IMG/VR virus record: IMGVR_UViG_3300036715_004471
Location: 310,001 to 374,000 of that record
Direction: 5' to 3' (one strand)
Length of the DNA: 64,000 nucleotides
Shown here: piece after piece, positions 9,554-47,803 of the stretch
Layout: the number at the start of each line of letters is the position of its first letter
Numbering within the stretch: the first letter of the stretch is position 1
Program-made: the position numbers and the translations under genes
Notes under the pieces: model-generated
Seen by the model: only the letters and a program-made list of their open reading frames with translations
What the model was told of the DNA's origin: nothing
Databases searched by the model: none

Positions 9554-9805
9554 TCACTTAAGCATTTTACCTAGTAATTTCCCAAACCAAAACGGAAATT
9601 CAGAAATTAATACAAGAATCATTACAAATAAGAAAAAAGGGAACCCCGCAATAGTGCAAATGATGTTATCAATATCGATATCTTGGATTAAACCAAGATG
9701 CTGACCTTTTGATGCAAGATATCCTTTGTATATGGCTTTGATTGTAAAACCGCCAAATAATACTATCATGGCAAAAAAGAAATAAATAACAAGGGCTATT
9801 AACAT
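9554..9805 (-). CDS. small membrane protein
   Basis: Two hydrophobic segments. Confidence 0.6.
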   Translation of the reverse strand: MLIALVIYFFFAMIVLFGGFTIKAIYKGYLASKGQHLGLIQDIDIDNIICTIAGFPFFLFVMILVLISEFPFWFGKLLGKMLK

Positions 9806-10785
9806 TATTTGCTTAACTCCAACATTCTTTCAATAGAAATCCTTGCTTGATTCATTAGTTCATCTGGCAAGAAAATTTGTGGTTGTAGATTTTTCAATGA
9901 AAGATAAACTTTTTCCAAAGTATTTTTCTTCATGAAAGGACATTCATTGCAAGCACAATTTGCTTCTGGGGGCGCAGGAATAAATGTCTTATCAGGCGCT
10001 GCCTTTTGCATCTGATGTAAAATACCAGATTCAGTGGCTACAATGAATTCTTTATTTGGATCTTTGATTGCAAAGTTTAGAATACCAGTAGTAGATCCAA
10101 TATAATCAGCCATCTTTAAAATGGATTCTTCACATTCAGGATGAGCTAATACCAAAGCTTTTGGATAACGCTCTTTAAGACCAATGAGTTTTCTTTCACT
10201 GAATGTTTCATGAACAATACAGCTGCCCTGCCAAAGGACCATATCTCTTTTTAGTTTTTTCGATAAGAATGCCCCTAAATTCTTATCGGGGGCGAAAAGA
10301 ATAGTCTTATCTTTTGAAACAGCATTAACTATTCTTTCAGCATTAGAAGAAGTGCAAATATAATCTGAAAGTGCTTTTACTTCTGCGGAACAGTTAATAT
10401 AACTAATCGTTACAAGATTAGGATCCACTTCTTCTTTTAGTTTTTCTTGTAACTTAAAGAGGTCTGAGGCTTTACAACCATCTGCTAATGAACAGCCGGC
10501 TTCTAAATCAGGAAGCACTACAATTTTACTAGGATTGAGTATTTTGGCGGTTTCAGCCATGAAATGAACCCCCGCAAAACAAATAACATCGGCTTGAGTC
10601 TTCGCCGCCTCCTGCGAAAGCTGCAAAGAATCACCAATAAAATCTGCTATGTCTTGTATTTCCGAGTCTTGATAGTAATGTGCCAAAATAACAGCATTAC
10701 GTTCTTTCTTGAGTTTTAGAATTTCTTTTTCTAAATCCAAAGAAGGATCAATGTGATCCTGATCATACATTTTTAGATGTTTCAT
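9805..10785 (-). CDS. nadA: quinolinate synthase A
   Basis: [62 protein letters not shown]. Start moved to 10785 because the track's extension lies inside a tRNA. Confidence 0.95.
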
Positions 10786-10811
10786 TTCAAACTTTCCATT
10801 CTTATTTTTAG

Positions 10812-10884
10812 CTCCCCTGGAGGGATTCGAACCCACGCAAAACCGTTTTAGAGGCGGCTGCTCTAACCACTGAGCTACAGGGGA
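10812..10884 (-). tRNA. amber suppressor tRNA (anticodon CUA)
   Basis: TCCCCTG TA GCTC AGTGGTTA GAGC A GCCGC CTCTAAA ACGGT TTTGC GTGGG TTCGAAT CCCTC CAGGGGA G. U33 precedes CTA (10849-10851); U1-A72, G73; followed by CTA, not CCA. Confidence 0.85.
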
Positions 10885-10902
10885 ATTCCAGATAACTTTA
10901 TA

Positions 10903-11247
10903 TCATGATCCTCTCAAAGCTAGAGGAAGTCTACTACAAAGTCTCCTAGTGTCGGAGCCCGGAGCGAGGGCAATTGCAGTAATTTGATTATCAACATCCG
11001 GCTCTCTAAAGATGGAATGTTTGATATTTTTTTTACCCGCCTCTTCAATTAAAGAATTCAATTCTCGCTCATTTTGAACCGAAAGAAAACCCAAATAATT
11101 GGAATTTTCAAACCATTCTTTGTTAATATCAGGGTGCTCAAAGGCGAATTGCACAGCAGCATGAATGCTCTGTACGCCCTGATAACCTGGACTCATATCT
11201 GCACGAGTAACAATGTACAACTTATCACCTGATTTAATCTACGACAT
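10903..11247 (-). CDS. Pth2-like peptidyl-tRNA hydrolase with in-frame TAG at codon 3
   Basis: KLYIVTRADMSPGYQGVQSIHA...FREPDVDNQITAIAL..LPL is PTH2-like. SD AAGGAG (11255-11260), 7 nt spacer, then ATG TCG TAG ATT AAA TCA GGT GAT AAG TTG TAC in frame with the tracked ORF. Confidence 0.8.
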
Positions 11248-11827
11248 GATCAATCTCCTTAAATAATTTCTGGCAAATTTGTTCGCCCTTCTTGTTAATT
11301 TGCTTCAACTTAATCTTAAAAGATGTGGAATCAATACCACCAAACATTTCAGCATTAGCATGAATCTCAGCCAAACCAACAATTAGCAATGTAATTGCTT
11401 CTTTATGTTTGATAAATTCATCAATCTCATTAGACTTCATGGTATGAATCATCATATCCATTCCAATAAGATTAGCTACAGTTGGTGAGCCGCCCAAAGA
11501 TAACCAAGTTTGGCGAGACTTTTCTGCATGATTTGGAAAATGTCTTTTTCCATTTTCATCAACAATCATACAATAAGGCTTACCGCAATCATGGAAGATC
11601 GTATATTCTTCGATAATATCTTTAGGCAAAAGATTTTTGAGAAGATTGTGTCTGAATTCCAGACACCAATTAGGAAGCTTAAATCCATCAGGCGATGATT
11701 TGCCTTCCAAAATATCAATCAATTTGAATGTGTAATTTTTAACAGCAATGCCGTGCTCATAAACTGATTGAGTATCAGTCTGAGAACAGTTTTGCATATC
11801 ATGAATTAAGCTATCTTTCTACCACAT
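11234..11827 (-). CDS. HD-domain protein with in-frame TAG at codon 3
   Basis: SVYEHG...FHDCGKP...HFPNHAEKS resembles the HD domain of CCA-adding/poly(A) polymerase and Pnkp-associated proteins. SD GAAGGA, 7 nt spacer, then ATG TGG TAG AAA GAT AGC TTA ATT CAT GAT ATG CAA in frame with the tracked ORF. Confidence 0.78.
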
Positions 11828-11854
11828 AATCATATCCTTCTTTCATATATCAGA

Positions 11855-12439
11855 TTATTGAAATGTCATTAAAACAGATAATCTGTTATTAAGATGATCT
11901 AAATCTTTGAATTTGGAAATGTCCAAATCAAAAGAGTTGACGCGTTTGTAGTCTACATTTACAATAGTATGCTGTCCACGATATCTAACTATATCAACTA
12001 GTTTGCCGTGAGCTTTAGTATACTTCAACTCTTCTTGCTCTAATTTGACTGATGGGAAGATGCCGGTCTTATATGTAGATTTGTTGATTGTAAATTCAAA
12101 AGCCCCAGCAACACCCTCGACATGTTCATGTGCGGTTTGAATTTTGAATTTACAAGTTCTGCAAGATTTATCTAAACCTATTGGTCGATTTGACATCGCC
12201 CTAATAAGCTGCTCTCCTACAATCAATTTATTGTCTTCGGTGGTAATAACTAAAGGATGTTCTTTGTTAGTGGAAATAATGGATCCTTCATCAAAAGCCA
12301 TTTTGATATGAATCCGATCATTACCCCAATCCCCTTTACCTGATCTGATACCACGAACTACAAGGATCATGTTTTTTCCACAAACTAAACAATTAGGAAT
12401 ATACTCGATGAATTCCTTAATAGAATTGAATATTTTCAT
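11855..12439 (-). CDS. Zn-finger hypothetical protein, paralog of 54393-54968
   Basis: MKIFNSIKEF..CLVCG..CRTC; ends RLSVLMTFQ. Confidence 0.65.
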   Translation of the reverse strand: MKIFNSIKEFIEYIPNCLVCGKNMILVVRGIRSGKGDWGNDRIHIKMAFDEGSIISTNKEHPLVITTEDNKLIVGEQLIRAMSNRPIGLDKSCRTCKFKIQTAHEHVEGVAGAFEFTINKSTYKTGIFPSVKLEQEELKYTKAHGKLVDIVRYRGQHTIVNVDYKRVNSFDLDISKFKDLDHLNNRLSVLMTFQ

Positions 12440-12489
12440 ATTATGCATCCGAACTTACTAATTATCATCTATATTGCTAGGAGGTAATC

Positions 12490-13227
12490 ATGACGGCTCA
12501 ACTAGTACCAACAGTAAAAACATCTTACTCTCCAGAGGAGTTAATCAAAAGCTTCATTGAAGGCTGGAAAAAACAATTTGGCACCATGCCAAATAAAAAA
12601 TCAATAGCCATATTGTGGGCTCAAAACAGAATTGAAACTGGAGCGACCTCGGCTATGTGGAATAATAATATAGGGAATGTTAAGTACGTTCCTAGTAATA
12701 ACCCAGAGAGTGATAATAATATTCAATACATGATGTTATCTAATGTCTGGGAAATCATCAACGGAAAAAAGGTTGTTTTCCAACCACCTCACAAAGCAAC
12801 TTGGTTTAGAGCATTTCCAACTTTAACAGACGGAGTTGCTTTTCATTTAGATTTCTTGAAAAATCATAGATACAAAAAAGCTTGGGCAGCCATCGAAGCT
12901 GGTAGTCCTTCCAACTTTGCGCATCTCTTAAAAGAAGCTGGTTATTACACTGCTCCAGAAGAAGATTATTCTAAAGCTATAGCTCTATTTTTTATGAGAT
13001 TTATAAGAGATGATACTTATGAAAAAGTATTAGCCTCTTTGGTAGCACCAAAACCAACTACTATTGTAAATCATGTTGAAACTATAACGGTAGAAACACC
13101 AATAGCACCACTGCCAGTGGAGCAACCAACGAGTGTTACTCCTATTCCGACAGCAGTGCCTCCACCAAATAAATCATTGTGGCAAACTATTATTCAATTT
13201 ATTTTGGGATTATTTAAAAGAAAATAA
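12490..13227 (+). CDS. putative endolysin (glucosaminidase/FlgJ-like lysozyme fold)
   Basis: AQ..IETG, NNNIGNVK, FRAF, LKEAGYYTA; Pro/Thr linker; C-terminal amphipathic helix SLWQTIIQFILGLFKRK; GGAGG RBS. Confidence 0.7.
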   Translation: MTAQLVPTVKTSYSPEELIKSFIEGWKKQFGTMPNKKSIAILWAQNRIETGATSAMWNNNIGNVKYVPSNNPESDNNIQYMMLSNVWEIINGKKVVFQPPHKATWFRAFPTLTDGVAFHLDFLKNHRYKKAWAAIEAGSPSNFAHLLKEAGYYTAPEEDYSKAIALFFMRFIRDDTYEKVLASLVAPKPTTIVNHVETITVETPIAPLPVEQPTSVTPIPTAVPPPNKSLWQTIIQFILGLFKRK

Positions 13228-13603
13228 TCAATCCTGAATGATTGTTAATGAAATCATCAAGAGATGAATAGCTTTCAATTATTCTATAATAAAGAGGTCC
13301 CAAAACTCCATTTGGGACCTTATTTCTTGGATTATGATAATATCTTCTTACGGAAAAAGAATTAAAAGATGGTTTGAATATTATTTTGAACCAGAAAAAA
13401 TCTTTTACGGTTTTAGCAAAAATAACTTCACATTGTTCTTTTGTTTTATTAGCATGCCCACAGGCAGCCTCAATACAATCATCAGAACAACTGAATGTAA
13501 CATCGTTAATTGACATATTACCAAAACGCTTTATTACTGAAGTATCTATTAACGATTTTATCAACTTTGAACATCGTATCGATTGATACAATTCCTTCAT
13601 CAA
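13214..13603 (-). CDS. hypothetical protein with C-terminal F-x motif
   Basis: Ends HSGLIIFF. Confidence 0.55.
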   Translation of the reverse strand: MMKELYQSIRCSKLIKSLIDTSVIKRFGNMSINDVTFSCSDDCIEAACGHANKTKEQCEVIFAKTVKDFFWFKIIFKPSFNSFSVRRYYHNPRNKVPNGVLGPLYYRIIESYSSLDDFINNHSGLIIFF

Positions 13604-13814
13604 AATTTTTCCACTCTACATGATACTTATTATTTGTTAATCGAATTAACCTTAGTGACCAGATTGATGAGGTTGTAGAGTTTCTTTTATAATGCAGTGC
13701 TCCATAATAAGACTTATCTGGAGCAGAACTTTTTTCTATTACAAAGTCTCTATTATCAACTGATAAATTCATCTTACCAGTAGAAAAAATTTCTATCGCT
13801 ACTTTAAGATCCAT
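13518..13814 (-). CDS. hypothetical protein with C-terminal F-x motif
   Basis: Likely start MDLKVAIE (track extension overlaps the tmRNA); ends RYFSNKAFW. Confidence 0.6.
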   Translation of the reverse strand: MDLKVAIEIFSTGKMNLSVDNRDFVIEKSSAPDKSYYGALHYKRNSTTSSIWSLRLIRLTNNKYHVEWKNFDEGIVSIDTMFKVDKIVNRYFSNKAFW

Positions 13815-13843
13815 TTTATACTGCTTTGCAAAATTATATACTT

Positions 13844-14197
13844 TGGTGGACCTGCGTGGTACCGCCCCACGGTCTTCCATAATCCAGATTAAAAATCGTT
13901 CACAAGTTTAGCCAATTTCAATGTAATTGACAACATCTTATTGAATTCGCTCAATAAAACTATCCCTGTTGATTTCACATTAACATCCGAGAACAAAGTT
14001 AACATTATCTTTTGTGGGTTGATATTCTCTTGACTACCAAAGATATCTTATCTAGAGAACATCCTTAAGCAGCTAGTGCTAGAGGAGCAGATGCATTATC
14101 GTTTGCAACTATACGTTAATCGTTAATTTAAGCCAATGACGATCATTTGGCACTTGCTTTTCAATGTTTCATACAGAATCGAATCTATTTCAAGCCC
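13844..14197 (-). ncRNA. ssrA: tmRNA
   Basis: 5' GGGCTTGAAATAGATTCGA pairs with 3' CAGGTCC-A-CCA (G3:U70 Ala identity). Resume context TAGTT-GCA; tag ORF ANDNASAPLALAA*; about 354 nt. Confidence 0.93.
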
Positions 14198-14750: not shown

Positions 14751-14824
14751 TGGAGCTGAAAGTCGGTACTGCCCCGACATCTTCTCGTTACGAGGGAGAT
14801 ATTCTACTATTGAACTACATCAGC
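14751..14824 (-). tRNA. tRNA-Thr(CGU)
   Basis: GCTGATG..TCTCC-CTCGTAA-CGAGA..GTCGG GGCAGTA CCGAC..TCAGC T CCA; non-canonical T-loop. Confidence 0.8.
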
Positions 14825-15463
14825 TTTTATATCATTCATTATTTCTTTTTCTAATTTGTATCTTTTTGCTCTTTCAAATCTACCATTACCTTTATTACGA
14901 CCCTTAAAAGTTGGAGATATTGAGTCGCAATTATTACATATAACTCTCAGATTAGATAACTTATTATTGTATGAATTACCATCGATATGATCTAATACTA
15001 ACGGAATCGTAACGCCTAACCATTCTGATAAATTACAAGATTGGCATTTATTTTCACATAATTCAATAAGGTATTTTTTGCCTATAAGATTATTTGAAGA
15101 GTTATCAACTCCAGTTAATAACAATTCTTTTTTAGTTTCTGACCACCAAAAATTAGTCATGCATTGTTTAGAACAGTATTTATGCTGTCCTTTTTCAATG
15201 AGCTTCATAGTGCACCACAAACAATTATCTAATACTATATGCGAAGTGCCACCTCTTACAAAATTATTATAAGTCGCTCCACAACTTTGACTACAAAAAT
15301 CATTTGCTCTTTTATCATATGTAATGATTTTTTGACAATGTTTACATTGTTTAGCATTTTGATTGTATTTATCAATTCTAGAATTTTTGCGAATACTTGC
15401 TGTTTTGGCAGCAGCTAATCCACCTAATTTACCAGCATCACTATAACTAGATTTATCTCTCAT
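14807..15463 (-). CDS. HNH homing endonuclease inside the tRNA-Thr cluster
   Basis: FCSQSC/YCSKQC Zn repeats, LVLDHIDGNSYNNKLSNLRVICNNCD; the stop lies inside tRNA-Thr(CGU). Confidence 0.85.
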   Translation of the reverse strand: MRDKSSYSDAGKLGGLAAAKTASIRKNSRIDKYNQNAKQCKHCQKIITYDKRANDFCSQSCGATYNNFVRGGTSHIVLDNCLWCTMKLIEKGQHKYCSKQCMTNFWWSETKKELLLTGVDNSSNNLIGKKYLIELCENKCQSCNLSEWLGVTIPLVLDHIDGNSYNNKLSNLRVICNNCDSISPTFKGRNKGNGRFERAKRYKLEKEIMNDIKADVVQ

Positions 15464-45174: not shown

Positions 45175-45482
45175 TTAATTTTTAATCTCATCAGGGTCTT
45201 CCTCAAAAATCAATTCATTATCTTTGTATTTTTGAAGAATATCTTGATGAATTTTCCAAATATCTCTACCAAAAGACAATGCCCCGGCTGTCCACCGTAT
45301 TCTAAGAATTAGGGATTCGGGACATTCCACTTTTTTAATTCCTCACTTAGCCATAGTCCAGCATAACAAACCTCTCGTATGATGGGAGAGACAGATACTT
45401 GTGGATAAAGCTGATTATCTTGTTCAAGAATTTTAGACCAACGTTCTATATCTTCGTTAGCGATCGACTCCGGTCTCGACAT
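45175..45482 (-). pseudogene. hypothetical protein split by a -1 frameshift at A_AAA_AAG
   Basis: MSRPES...EELKK, then the -1 frame continues VECPESLILRIRWTAGALSFGRDIW...DEIKN* and fills the gap to 45175. Confidence 0.6.
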
Positions 45483-46674
45483 GGGCATCCTCAATAATTA
45501 TTCGGCAGAATTTCTTCTTGCCTTTTCTTACAATTAATTCGTCATCATTACTGAGACGACTAATATGTAAGGTGGGATCAGTAATTGTAATATCATTAAT
45601 CGAAATACCTCGACCATTAATAAGATTTCTTGCATCAGATTTTGACTTAGCAAAATTACATCTTACTAACAAATCAAGTATTGAAAGATTATCTTGAATT
45701 GAGATTGCCTCAATATCAATTCCCTCTTTCTTCTCAAACAAGGCTTCTGCCTGCCTGAGTGTCGTCACCGCTTCCAATTCACCATGAACCATTTTAGTTA
45801 ATTCAAAAGCCAATCTCTTTTTGGCAGAATTGATTTCATCAATAGTAGAAAATGGAATATTATCAATTTCCTCTACTGAGAGTAGGGTTAATAGTTTGAA
45901 ACAATTCATAACTTCACTATCTGGTAAGTTTCTCCAGAATTGAAAGAAGTCAAAAACTGAAGTCAGATTTTTATCTAACCAAACGGCTCCCTTTTCAGTT
46001 TTACCCATTTTCTGACCGGCAGAATTAGTTAACAATGTTATTGTTAATCCAAACGCTTCTTGTTCAGATTTCTTATGAATTAGATCAATTCCTGCCAAAA
46101 TATTAGACCATTGATCATCTCCACCAATCTGAAGCACACAATTATGCCGCCTATTTAACTCGAAGAAGTCAAATGCTTGCATCAACATGTAGTTGAACTC
46201 AAGAAATGATAATCCATTTTCCATACGAGACTTGAAACAATCAGCTCTTAACATGTTGTTAACAGAAAAATGTCTACCAATCTCTGAAATGAATTGCAAG
46301 AAATTTATATCTCGAAACCAGCCAATATTGTTAATAATACTGACATCGCCAATAATATTGTGAATTTGTTTGGCAATTTCTGTTGAATTAGACATAGTTT
46401 GACCTAAATCTAATGCTTGTCTCATAGAGCTTTTGCCACTAGGATCGCCAATACTAGCCGTAGCTCCACCAACTAACATAATTGGATTATGTCCAACATT
46501 TTTAAGACGTAGGGCGGTAACAATTTGTAGCAAATGTCCTACATGCAAACTTTGTGCTGTAGGATCAAATCCAATGTAAAAACTGATCTTCTCATTATCT
46601 AAAAGATGTTTAATCTTATTATGATTTGTTGATTGTTTAATCAATCCCCTCTGAATCAGTTCCTCGAATATCAT
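45457..46674 (-). CDS. tyrS: tyrosyl-tRNA synthetase
   Basis: YIGFDPTAQSLHVGH, GDPSGK, YMLMQAFDF, QIGGDDQWSNI, KMGKT, S4 domain. Confidence 0.96.
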   Translation of the reverse strand: MIFEELIQRGLIKQSTNHNKIKHLLDNEKISFYIGFDPTAQSLHVGHLLQIVTALRLKNVGHNPIMLVGGATASIGDPSGKSSMRQALDLGQTMSNSTEIAKQIHNIIGDVSIINNIGWFRDINFLQFISEIGRHFSVNNMLRADCFKSRMENGLSFLEFNYMLMQAFDFFELNRRHNCVLQIGGDDQWSNILAGIDLIHKKSEQEAFGLTITLLTNSAGQKMGKTEKGAVWLDKNLTSVFDFFQFWRNLPDSEVMNCFKLLTLLSVEEIDNIPFSTIDEINSAKKRLAFELTKMVHGELEAVTTLRQAEALFEKKEGIDIEAISIQDNLSILDLLVRCNFAKSKSDARNLINGRGISINDITITDPTLHISRLSNDDELIVRKGKKKFCRIIIEDAHVETGVDR

Positions 46675-46963
46675 TGTCTTTTTCACTTTCAGTGTTTGCA
46701 ATTTCTGCTAGTACATCACCATGACAAGATAATGGATGACACCAACATCCTAATATTTTACCTTTTAATTCATTCTTAGCCGCTTCAAGCAACCAAGGCG
46801 TATTCATGATGTAATTACGATAGTATTCAATAGCTTCTTCTCTCGAATCTACTTTATAGATCGCAAGTGTGCCTGGTAGATGGGAGAAGGGATTGCCAAA
46901 TTTCGAAGGTCTACCTATGTAAATATCATATTTGTCTTTTTTACAATGCACAACTTTACACAT
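46637..46963 (-). CDS. DUF4326 protein
   Basis: YIGRPSKFGNPF...LGCWCHPLSCHGDVL. Confidence 0.85.
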   Translation of the reverse strand: MCKVVHCKKDKYDIYIGRPSKFGNPFSHLPGTLAIYKVDSREEAIEYYRNYIMNTPWLLEAAKNELKGKILGCWCHPLSCHGDVLAEIANTESEKDNDIRGTDSEGID

Positions 46964-47630: not shown

Positions 47631-47704
47631 TGGCGCCCCTGTTAGGAATTGAGCCCAACCAACAAGCTTCGTAGACTCGTGCCGTGAGCCACACGGACAG
47701 GGGC
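47631..47704 (-). tRNA. tRNA-Arg(ACG), atypical D-arm and T-loop
   Basis: GCCCCTG/CAGGGGC, CGAGT-CTACGAA-GCTTG, CCA; 5-bp D-stem CCGTG/CACGG, T-loop CTCAATT. Confidence 0.75.
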
Positions 47705-47715
47705 ATATTAAATTG

Positions 47716-47803
47716 TGGTCTCTCCGGCAAGATTCGAACTTGCATATGGGAAATTAATCCCGTTGGTTCGTAGCCAACTGCCTATCCTTTAGACTACGGA
47801 GAG
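47716..47803 (-). tRNA. tRNA-Arg(ACG) with a long variable arm
   Basis: CTCTCCG/CGGAGAG, GTTGG-CTACGAA-CCAAC, V-arm GGGA-TTAATT-TCCC-ATAT, TTCGAAT, ACCA. Confidence 0.85.

What the first reader, a model, noticed from the sequence alone, without database searches (positions are those of the whole stretch)
10809..10884. Identity and maturation of the suppressor tRNA: U1-A72/G73 body, and the only tRNA here without encoded CCA
Seen: acceptor TCCCCTG/CAGGGGA, discriminator G, short variable loop, C31:A39 and a T-stem T:T mismatch. The 3' end reads G-CTA, whereas the other 13 tRNAs and the tmRNA encode CCA. Established: U1-A72 with G73 is typical of bacterial tRNA-Gln/Asn and is the GatCAB determinant. 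Bacterial TyrRS wants A73 and a long V-arm, and tRNA-Pyl has a different architecture. Inference: it probably inserts Gln (or Asn), is unlikely to be a substrate of the phage TyrRS, and its need for 3' trimming and CCA addition could be the regulated step of the amber gate.
Basis: partly seen in the sequence, partly recalled or inferred. Interest (0 to 1): 0.6.

Follow-up and report, generated by a model that had tools for sequence, protein, structure and literature searches.

The report
Huge-phage amber suppressor tRNA, no CCA
This is a real, conserved amber-suppressor tRNA of a 446-kb environmental phage whose genome has removed almost all TAG codons, so it belongs to a known kind of phage code-changing kit, but here it has nothing of its own to decode.

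Summary
Window 10812-10884 (minus strand) is a canonical 73-nt tRNA with anticodon CUA, U1-A72, G73, a C31xA39 mismatch and a U50xU64 mismatch. It is followed by CTA, whereas the 13 other tRNAs and the tmRNA in the window all encode CCA.

Orthologues sit at the same locus (next to PTH2 and NadA) in related huge phages. Five stem pairs show compensatory changes, and U1-A72, C2-G71, C4-G69 and G73 never vary, so the family is under selection.

- **Acceptor end:** in this clade U1-A72 with G73 occurs only in tRNA-Gln, tRNA-Asn and a Gln-bodied tRNA(CCG).
- **Body:** the rest is closest to the clade's tRNA-Arg genes, with both ArgRS determinants (A20, C35) lost.
- **Amino acid:** Gln via host GlnRS is the best guess. 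It cannot be tested here, because the phage has no in-frame TAG.
- **"Amber gate":** no gated gene was found. TAG ends only 5 of 310 long ORFs, and the phage encodes RF2 and a second tRNA(CUA).
- **Missing CCA:** it is a single C75-to-U difference from orthologues that encode CCA. Even so, suppressors in this clade lack CCA far more often than sense tRNAs do (6/9 against 6/196).

Expression and charging remain untested.

The parts
10812..10884 (-). Amber suppressor tRNA(CUA), positions 1-73: U1-A72, G73, C31xA39, U50xU64
   Evidence: ARAGORN; Rfam RF00005 61.9 bits with alignment; cloverleaf is the MFE fold; orthologue alignment with 5 compensatory pairs
10849..10851 (-). Anticodon CUA (positions 34-36) in the 7-nt loop CUCUAAA, with U33, A37 and A38
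   Evidence: The A36-A37-A38 run is the known MiaA (i6A37) context (own knowledge)
10809..10811 (-). Encoded 3' trailer CTA where orthologues encode CCA (C75 to U)
   Evidence: unchanged in contigs from other metagenomes
10903..11220 (-). Upstream gene, peptidyl-tRNA hydrolase PTH2 family; its stop lies 18 nt before the tRNA
   Evidence: Pfam PF01981 E=4.9e-8; NCBIfam Pth2 match E=1.4e-6, below the curated cut-off; served as the synteny anchor in relatives
9805..10785 (-). Downstream gene, quinolinate synthase NadA; its ATG lies 26 nt after G73, with no terminator between
   Evidence: Pfam PF02445 E=1.6e-119; no terminator-like site between the tRNA and NadA; same order in relative G005
13844..14197 (-). 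Phage tmRNA, CCA encoded, part of the same translation-gene neighbourhood
   Evidence: Rfam RF00023 65.3 bits; 3' end read; also present in relatives
45457..46701 (-). Phage bacterial-type tyrosyl-tRNA synthetase; an unlikely partner for this tRNA
   Evidence: NCBIfam TIGR00234 382.8 bits, full length; type-II tRNA-Tyr genes of relatives G003 and G004 have A73 and a long variable region

Best explanation
The locus encodes a functional elongator-type amber suppressor tRNA of a huge phage (about 340 kb of phage DNA in a 446-kb record) found in microbial-mat, sediment and aquatic metagenomes.

Origin and identity:
- The tRNA belongs to a family ('family A') kept at the same PTH2/NadA locus in related phages.
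- Its scaffold is closest to the clade's tRNA-Arg genes.
- It has lost both ArgRS determinants (A20 to U, C35 to U).
- It carries the acceptor end that in this clade marks tRNA-Gln and tRNA-Asn (U1-A72, G73).
- With C34-U35 in the anticodon, this makes host GlnRS the most likely charging enzyme, so Gln would be inserted. This step is inferred, at about 0.5.

Role in the genome:
- It acts together with a phage RF2 and a second tRNA(CUA).
- The genome has purged TAG as a terminator and does not use TAG as a sense codon.
- TAG is therefore effectively unassigned for the phage. This fits the suppressor-acquired, not-yet-recoded stage of the published route to TAG recoding, and it is not a gate on particular genes.

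Maturation (inferred):
- The tRNA sits between two protein genes with no terminator, so it is probably cut out of a longer transcript.
- Because position 75 is U, the two end bases must be removed (RNase Z/BN or exonucleases) and C75-A76 rebuilt by a CCA-adding enzyme before charging.
- That probably lowers or delays the amount of active suppressor. There is no evidence that it is a dedicated switch.
For: Genuine and under selection:
- Rfam 61.9 bits in the canonical CUA register; cloverleaf is the MFE fold.
- Orthologues occur in G003, G005, L074, L095 and L086. Five of 20 pairs show double compensatory changes, and U1-A72, C2-G71, C4-G69 and G73 are invariant.
- The locus is syntenic, next to PTH2 and NadA.
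- The sequence is identical in contigs from further metagenomes.

The genome is adapted to suppression:
- TAG ends 5 of 310 long ORFs in the phage part, against 20 of 105 in the GC-rich block.
- TAG makes up 23% of stop trinucleotides over all frames.
- Relatives show 5 of 132.
- RF2 is encoded (prfB 417 bits, above the cut-off) and is kept in the complete relative G003.

Not recoded:
- There is no excess of in-frame TAG.
- Tail sheath, portal and terminase are intact under code 11.
- Tail sheath orthologues have no internal stops.

Identity:
- The nearest sense tRNAs are the clade's tRNA-Arg genes (max 0.79, mean 0.61). Thr scores 0.75, Asn 0.64 and Gln 0.62.
- The clade's tRNA-Arg genes carry GGAUA (A20); family A has U20.
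- U1-A72 with G73 is restricted to Gln, Asn and the Gln-bodied tRNA(CCG).
- No phage GluRS/GlnRS was found, and there is no above-threshold class IIb enzyme.
- Published work reports only TAG-to-Gln for phages of standard-code hosts, and glutaminylation of amber suppressors in E. coli.

3' end:
- The tails are CTA here, CCA in G003/G005/L074/L095 and CAA in L086.
- The two bacterial maturation routes are summarised in PMC10424219.
Against: - No RNA data exist for this phage, so expression, processing and charging are all unshown.
- With no in-frame TAG anywhere, the inserted amino acid cannot be read from alignments.
- GlnRS elements G2-C71, G3-C70, G36 and U38 are absent.
- The host is unknown and may lack GlnRS, as many bacterial phyla do.
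- Compared with its orthologues this copy has three derived weak points: C31xA39, U50xU64 and U75. These could mean decay rather than tuning.
- An Arg-derived amber suppressor in E. coli is known to take Lys (own knowledge).
Confidence: 0.55

Rival explanations
1. Decaying relic. The suppressor is losing function in a genome that no longer, or never, needs it. The two stem mismatches and the broken CCA would be early pseudogene changes, and the second tRNA(CUA) or nothing at all does the work.
For: - All three defects are unique to this copy among five family-A sequences.
- There are no TAG codons to decode.
- A second tRNA(CUA) exists at genome 15230-15303.
- The full-length CCA-adding enzyme of the relatives is absent here.
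- G002 has a degenerate copy at the family-A position that ARAGORN no longer calls.
Against: - It still has the highest Rfam tRNA score in the window and folds as a cloverleaf.
- The phage's own tRNA-Trp(CCA) has the same C31xA39 mismatch in an almost identical anticodon arm.
- The sequence is unchanged across several metagenomes. A divergent strain shows 2 differences in 241 nt over a piece that covers the tRNA, against 12 in 163 nt in an overlapping piece over NadA.
- TAG-stop avoidance and RF2 persist.
- The second suppressor also lacks CCA.
Confidence: 0.17
2. 3' trimming and CCA addition form a regulated step that times amber suppression during infection.
For: - Across six related records, 6 of 9 tRNA(CUA) genes lack CCA, against 6 of 196 sense tRNAs (Fisher p = 7.5e-7).
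- Family B suppressors never encode CCA (CTA or CAA).
- Family A lost CCA twice, each time at C75.
- The clade keeps a 257-aa nucleotidyltransferase, and relatives also keep a full-length CCA-adding-type enzyme.
Against: - No gated target exists, because there are no in-frame TAG codons.
- Orthologues of this very tRNA encode CCA.
- Host CCA-adding enzymes are near-universal (own knowledge), so the step is hard to keep switched off.
- The counts are not phylogenetically independent; there are about four or five independent losses.
- In the unrelated AT-rich phage contig L040, all five sense tRNA genes called in the fetched stretch end C-A-A or C-U-A, so such tails are not special to suppressors.
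Confidence: 0.12
3. It is a working suppressor but inserts something other than Gln. Lys is the most likely alternative, as for Arg-derived amber suppressors in E. coli. Trp is next (G73, C34, A36, and an anticodon arm like tRNA-Trp). Asn, Arg and Tyr are least likely.
For: - The body is Arg-like.
- The anticodon arm matches the phage tRNA-Trp(CCA) arm at all but two of 17 positions.
- The other tRNA(CUA) genes at this locus in relatives have G1-C72 or G1-U72 and discriminator A, C or U, so the clade does not enforce a single identity set on its suppressors.
- GlnRS elements at 2-71, 3-70, 36 and 38 are missing.
Against: - U1-A72 and G73 are invariant in family A while the rest of the acceptor stem covaries.
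- That combination is confined to Gln and Asn in the clade.
- A20 and C35 are lost, which argues against Arg. G34 and U36 are lost, against Asn. G73 and the short variable loop argue against Tyr and weaken Lys (own knowledge of the identity sets).
- Only Gln has been reported for TAG in phages of standard-code hosts.
Confidence: 0.16

Closest known systems
Code-change kit of TAG-recoded (code 15) phages such as Lak, Agate and crAss-like phages: suppressor tRNA(CUA) plus RF2 (Borges et al., bioRxiv 10.1101/2021.08.26.457843; PMC13037316)
   Same: Phage-encoded tRNA(CUA), phage RF2, a low-GC genome and depletion of TAG as a terminator. Reported cases put Gln at TAG, through host enzymes.
   Different: No in-frame TAG in any gene examined, including tail sheath, portal and terminase. 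The habitat is environmental (mat, sediment, aquatic), not gut. There are two suppressors of different bodies per genome. It matches the paper's proposed pre-recoding stage, which that paper documents for TGA suppressors in Agate phages, rather than a recoded genome.
E. coli amber suppressors charged by GlnRS: supE (tRNA-Gln CUA), su7 (tRNA-Trp CUA), and mischarging mutants of supF altered at 1-72 and 73 (own knowledge)
   Same: CUA anticodon with C34-U35, a weak 1-72 pair and G73, which is the combination that directs amber suppressors to GlnRS.
   Different: Arg-like scaffold; C2-G71 and C3-G70 instead of G2-C71 and G3-C70; A38 instead of U38. The host and its GlnRS are unknown.
Phage T4 tRNAs without encoded CCA, including the psu1 serine amber suppressor, which depend on host RNase BN and CCA-adding enzyme (own knowledge; the two maturation routes are summarised in PMC10424219)
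   Same: A phage suppressor tRNA whose activity depends on 3' trimming and CCA synthesis.
   Different: Here the end is one base from CCA, orthologues encode CCA, and nearly all other tRNAs of the same phage encode it.
The clade's own tRNA-Arg(ACG/UCU) genes
   Same: Nearest sense relatives: shared acceptor positions 4-7, D stem, T loop and 3' T-stem strand, and often G73.
   Different: G1-U72 became U1-A72, A20 became U20, and the anticodon is CUA. Both major ArgRS determinants are gone.

Membership tests
Canonical elongator tRNA (Rfam RF00005) | Cloverleaf with 7-bp acceptor, G18G19, T54-psi55-C56 loop, U33 and purine 37, scoring above the gathering threshold | tested here: met
   61.9 bits against a 29-bit cut-off, model positions 1-71 of 71; ARAGORN structure; MFE cloverleaf
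Amber suppressor tRNA | CUA at positions 34-36 of a 7-nt anticodon loop | tested here: met
   Loop CUCUAAA; the register is fixed by U33 and A37 in both ARAGORN and Rfam
Amber suppressor tRNA | Reads UAG in vivo (expressed, matured and aminoacylated) | not testable with these tools
   No RNA runs hold the locus. Indirect support only: TAG-stop avoidance and RF2
Bacterial tRNA-Gln | U1-A72 and G73 | tested here: met
   in the clade this combination is restricted to Gln, Asn and the Gln-bodied tRNA(CCG)
Bacterial tRNA-Gln | G2-C71, G3-C70, G36 and U38 (E. coli GlnRS set), and a Gln-type D arm | tested here: not met
   C2-G71, C3-G70, A36 and A38. The D arm is GCUC/GAGC with an 8-nt loop, unlike the clade's tRNA-Gln. 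Best similarity to Gln is 0.62, against 0.79 for Arg. Note that the tRNA-Gln genes of G003 also use C2-G71.
Bacterial tRNA-Asn | Anticodon GUU (G34, U35, U36) with G73 | tested here: not met
   Only U35 and G73 are retained. The acceptor start UCC resembles the clade's tRNA-Asn.
tRNA-Arg | A20 in the D loop and C35 | tested here: not met
   U20 and U35, while the clade's tRNA-Arg genes carry GGAUA and C35. The body is nevertheless the nearest neighbour of tRNA-Arg.
tRNA-Pyl | Short D loop without G18G19, 3-nt variable loop, 6-bp anticodon stem | tested here: not met
   8-nt D loop with GG, 5-nt variable loop, 5-bp anticodon stem. ARAGORN's 'Pyl' label is only its name for the CUA anticodon.
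Bacterial tRNA-Tyr (substrate of the phage TyrRS) | A73 and a long variable arm | tested here: not met
   G73 and a 5-nt variable loop. The type-II tRNA-Tyr genes of relatives G003 and G004 have A73 and 87-nt type-II bodies.
TAG-recoded (code 15) phage genome | In-frame TAG codons in genes, typically structural or lysis genes | tested here: not met
   No excess of TAG junctions. ORFs read through TAG gain only N-terminal artefacts. The one 212+118-aa case is a complete CoaE followed by a separate gene. Late genes are intact.
TAG-recoded (code 15) phage genome | Suppressor tRNA(CUA) and RF2 encoded by the phage | tested here: met
   Two tRNA(CUA) genes; prfB 417 bits above the curated cut-off

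The most novel reading that the evidence does not exclude
A clade of environmental huge phages keeps one to three amber suppressor tRNAs plus RF2 while holding its own genomes essentially free of TAG. Suppression would then be aimed outward, causing read-through of host or competitor TAG stops, or serving as insurance against amber mutations. It would not serve to decode phage genes. On this reading the suppressors are deliberately encoded with a broken CCA (C-U-A or C-A-A), so that their activity is throttled or timed through 3'-end repair.
Probability: 0.12. Interest if true: 0.8.

Novelty: new variant of a known kind. Interest (0 to 1): 0.5.

Why it matters
Phage amber suppressors with RF2 are known from TAG-recoded gut phages. 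This case shows the same kit fixed in a clade of environmental megaphages whose genomes contain almost no TAG at all. That is a natural example of a stop codon left unassigned, the stage that codon-capture and the published phage recoding model predict but rarely catch.

It also gives a traceable origin for a suppressor: an Arg-type scaffold with its Arg determinants removed and a Gln/Asn-type acceptor end installed.

Finally, it gives a testable statistical link between suppressor status and loss of the encoded CCA. If that link is functional, it would be a new way of tuning a code change.

The tRNA may also be of practical interest as a compact natural amber suppressor for laboratory use.

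Tried and rejected
- **Arg(UCU) register.** Rejected. It needs C33, and both ARAGORN and the Rfam alignment use U33-CUA-A37.
- **tRNA-Pyl.** Rejected on architecture.
- **Recent capture of a host tRNA lacking CCA.** The exact 5' half is absent from viral contigs. It has one irrelevant hit in 185,579 species genomes. BLAST against phage genomes gives only generic tRNA-Lys, Arg and Met hits, listed at 76-83% identity. The family is also old within the clade.
- **Reading the inserted amino acid from in-frame TAG alignments.** Impossible, because none was found. The best candidate (genome 11253) is the true stop of a full-length CoaE, followed by another gene. It has no homologues in the relatives.
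- **RNA evidence.** No RNA run holds the locus. The contigs laid on it show sequence only.
- **Chimera of the family A and family B genes,** to explain U50xU64 and the CTAAAA trailer. This would need two crossovers, and point mutations are simpler.
- **GC-rich block (genome about 20-126 kb) as host DNA that would reveal the host.** Its genes look like phage accessory genes, so no host could be named.
- **Whole-sequence identity to this genome's own tRNAs**. It was uninformative, and position-wise comparison over the clade replaced it.
- **Papers on RNase Z/BN and the CCA anti-determinant** (PMC3798534, PMC202377). Not held, so those points rest on my own knowledge.
- **tRNAscan-SE isotype models.** Not available here.

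Full report
**What is there**

The window is bases 310001-374000 of a 446,541-bp IMG/VR virus record. At window 10812-10884 on the minus strand lies a 73-nt tRNA. ARAGORN calls it with anticodon CUA; its 'Pyl' label is only the codon-table name. Rfam's tRNA model scores it at 61.9 bits, the best of all tRNAs in the window.

- acceptor TCCCCTG/CAGGGGA with U1-A72;
- G73;
- a 5-nt variable loop;
- C31xA39;
- U50xU64;
- CTA after the discriminator.

The Rfam alignment puts CUA at positions 34-36 with U33 and A37, so the Arg(UCU) register would need C33 and is rejected. The cloverleaf is the minimum-free-energy fold.

The window holds 13 other tRNAs, and all end in CCA. Ten come from default ARAGORN. 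Two Thr genes come from Rfam, and a second Arg(ACG) from ARAGORN at a lower threshold. The tmRNA also ends in CCA.

Contigs from further metagenomes (microbial mat and sediment) carry the same 3' end with no differences.

**Genome context**

The record has 56 ARAGORN tRNAs, all on the minus strand. They include a second tRNA(CUA) at genome 15230-15303. That one has G1-C72, A73, a Glu-like body and the 3' end CCU.

The phage also encodes:
- release factor 2 (prfB 417 bits, above the curated cut-off; genome 131157-132305);
- a full-length bacterial-type TyrRS (window 45457-46701);
- a 257-aa nucleotidyltransferase with only the head domain.

It has no GluRS/GlnRS. For class IIb enzymes there is only a sub-threshold hit.

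Outside a GC-rich block (about 20-126 kb), TAG terminates 5 of 310 long ORFs (1.6%). Inside the block the figure is 20 of 105. Over all six frames, TAG makes up 23% of stop trinucleotides.

TAG is also not a sense codon:
- Same-frame ORF pairs joined by TAG are rarer than those joined by TAA or TGA.
- Reading through TAG adds only short N-terminal artefacts.
- The one long case is the true stop of a complete dephospho-CoA kinase, followed by another gene.
- Tail sheath, portal and terminase are intact under code 11.

I found no gene that an 'amber gate' could control.

**Relatives**

Searching with the neighbouring PTH2 gene and the next ORF upstream of it found five related phage records of 110-481 kb. 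Each has a tRNA(CUA) near PTH2, and the fetched loci also hold tRNA-Thr and tRNA-Arg(CCU) genes and, in two of them, a tmRNA.
- TAG ends 5 of 132 long ORFs in the parts I hold.
- The complete relative G003 keeps RF2.
- Tail sheath orthologues (64-67% identity) have no internal stops.

The whole clade therefore carries suppressors and avoids TAG without being recoded.

**Two suppressor families**

The tRNA(CUA) genes at this locus fall into two main families; G004 has a third type.

Family A is the true orthologue of our tRNA. It sits directly upstream of NadA in G005 and is found in G003, G005, L074, L095 and L086. In a five-sequence alignment:
- 5 of 20 pairs show double compensatory changes;
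- U1-A72, C2-G71, C4-G69 and G73 never vary.

Our copy alone has C31xA39 (U-A in the others) and U50xU64 (G-U or U-A in the others).

Family B has G1-C72 and discriminator A, C or U. Its nearest sense tRNAs are scattered (Arg, Lys, Val, Asn).

**Identity**

I compared the tRNA position by position, with the anticodon left out, to 187 sense tRNAs from the six records. Its nearest neighbours are the clade's tRNA-Arg genes (max 0.79, mean 0.61). Thr follows at 0.75, Asn at 0.64 and Gln at 0.62. The orthologue in G003 also lands on Arg. The same nearest-neighbour test recovers the right isotype for 137 of 187 tRNAs, and for 25 of 27 Arg tRNAs.

The clade's tRNA-Arg genes have G1-U72 and GGAUA (A20). 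Family A has U1-A72, U20 and U35, so both major ArgRS determinants are gone.

Among sense tRNAs of the clade, U1-A72 with G73 occurs only in Gln (4/9), Asn (4/7) and a Gln-bodied tRNA(CCG).

From established identity rules (own knowledge):
- AsnRS needs G34 and U36.
- Bacterial TyrRS needs A73 and the long arm, which the type-II tRNA-Tyr genes of G003 and G004 do have.
- GlnRS takes amber suppressors that have a weak 1-72 pair and G73.

Published surveys report only Gln for TAG in phages of standard-code hosts. I therefore put Gln at about 0.5, Lys next, then Trp. The anticodon arm is nearly identical to that of the phage's tRNA-Trp(CCA), which shares the C31xA39 mismatch. None of this is direct evidence, and the host is unknown.

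**The 3' end**

Family A tails are CTA (ours), CCA (G003, G005, L074, L095) and CAA (L086). Family B tails are CTA or CAA and never CCA. The missing CCA in our gene is thus a single C75-to-U change and is not conserved in its family.

Even so, across the six records 6 of 9 tRNA(CUA) genes lack CCA, against 6 of 196 sense tRNAs (Fisher p = 7.5e-7). These counts represent roughly four or five independent losses, and two of the six 'sense' cases look like register errors.

Two facts weaken a dedicated-switch reading:
- Relatives have a full-length CCA-adding-type enzyme that tblastn does not find in this genome.
- In the unrelated AT-rich phage contig L040, all five sense tRNA genes called in the fetched stretch end C-A-A or C-U-A.

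The tRNA lies 18 nt after PTH2 and 26 nt before NadA, with no terminator-like site between the tRNA and NadA. It is probably excised from a longer transcript and then repaired by the RNase Z/BN or exonuclease route plus CCA addition (route summarised in PMC10424219). This part is inference.

**Verdict**

This is a genuine, selected amber suppressor tRNA. It is part of a suppressor-plus-RF2 kit in a TAG-free megaphage genome, and it fits the pre-recoding stage of the model of Borges et al..
- Gln is the most likely cargo, but this is unproven.
- TyrRS is an unlikely partner.
- The 'amber gate' has no visible target.
- The CCA defect is real and single-base, and it belongs to a clade-wide tendency of suppressors to lack CCA. 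The meaning of that tendency is open.
- A decaying copy cannot be excluded.

Noticed in passing
Outside the window: genome 15230-15303 (-), = L009:7231-7304: Second tRNA(CUA) in the same phage. It has G1-C72, A73, a Glu-like body and a clean cloverleaf (z = -2.45). Its encoded 3' end is CCU, again one base from CCA.
   Followed up: partly
Outside the window: genome 393305-393378 (beside tRNA-Gln(CUG) at 393382-393455); also L060:2586 and L053:7737: tRNA with anticodon CCG but a tRNA-Gln-type body (U1-A72 and the same D arm as the clade's tRNA-Gln). It sits beside tRNA-Gln(CUG) in G000 and G001 and also occurs in G003, and it lacks CCA in this genome. It may be a Gln-bodied reader of CGG.
   Followed up: no
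window 47716-47803 (-): An 88-nt tRNA(ACG) with a long variable arm and C1-G72, which is unusual for tRNA-Arg. A second, weaker tRNA(ACG) lies at 47631-47704.
   Followed up: no
Clade-wide: Nearly all tRNA-Arg genes of these phages have a G1-U72 wobble as the first acceptor pair (21 of 24, leaving out the Gln-bodied CCG type).
   Followed up: no
Outside the window: genome about 20,000-126,000: A 105-kb block at 46-63% GC inside a 34% GC phage. Genes lie on both strands, TAG stops are at a normal 19%, and the tRNAs there lack CCA. The GC edge near 126.0 kb is sharp. Its genes are of phage accessory type (amidoligase, PRPP synthetase, UvrD, HNH). It could be an island or a chimeric assembly. IMG/VR flags the record as a provirus.
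   Followed up: partly
Outside the window: genome 260311-261084 (-); relatives at L096:260-1495: A 257-aa nucleotidyltransferase with only the poly(A) polymerase/CCA head domain is conserved at 65-67% identity in G002, G003 and G005. Those relatives also have a 411-aa full-length CCA-adding-type enzyme, which this genome lacks.
   Followed up: partly
window 14807-15463 (-): An HNH-like ORF ends in a tandem TAG TAG. It is one of only five TAG-terminated long ORFs in the phage part.
   Followed up: no
window 9805-14197: Translation and quality-control genes cluster around the suppressor: PTH2, tmRNA, three tRNA-Thr genes and tRNA-Arg(CCU), together with NadA and a glucosaminidase. The PTH2, tRNA(CUA), tRNA-Thr and tRNA-Arg(CCU) arrangement recurs in most of the five relatives' fetched loci.
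   Followed up: partly
L040 (unrelated 140-kb viral contig, 28% GC): All five sense tRNA genes called in the fetched stretch end discriminator + CAA or CTA instead of CCA, as does its tRNA(CUA). C74 is kept, followed by an A/T-rich trailer.
   Followed up: no
Viral and metagenome contigs L020-L095: The anticodon arm GCCGY / CUCUAAA / ACGG is shared by amber suppressor tRNAs with many different acceptor stems and discriminators in unrelated phage contigs. This suggests a convergent or widely spread 'good suppressor' arm.
   Followed up: partly
Outside the window: genome 398268-398594 (-): Weak, sub-threshold match (19 bits) of a 188-aa ORF to the class IIb aminoacyl-tRNA synthetase core, next to the tRNA arrays.
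   Followed up: no
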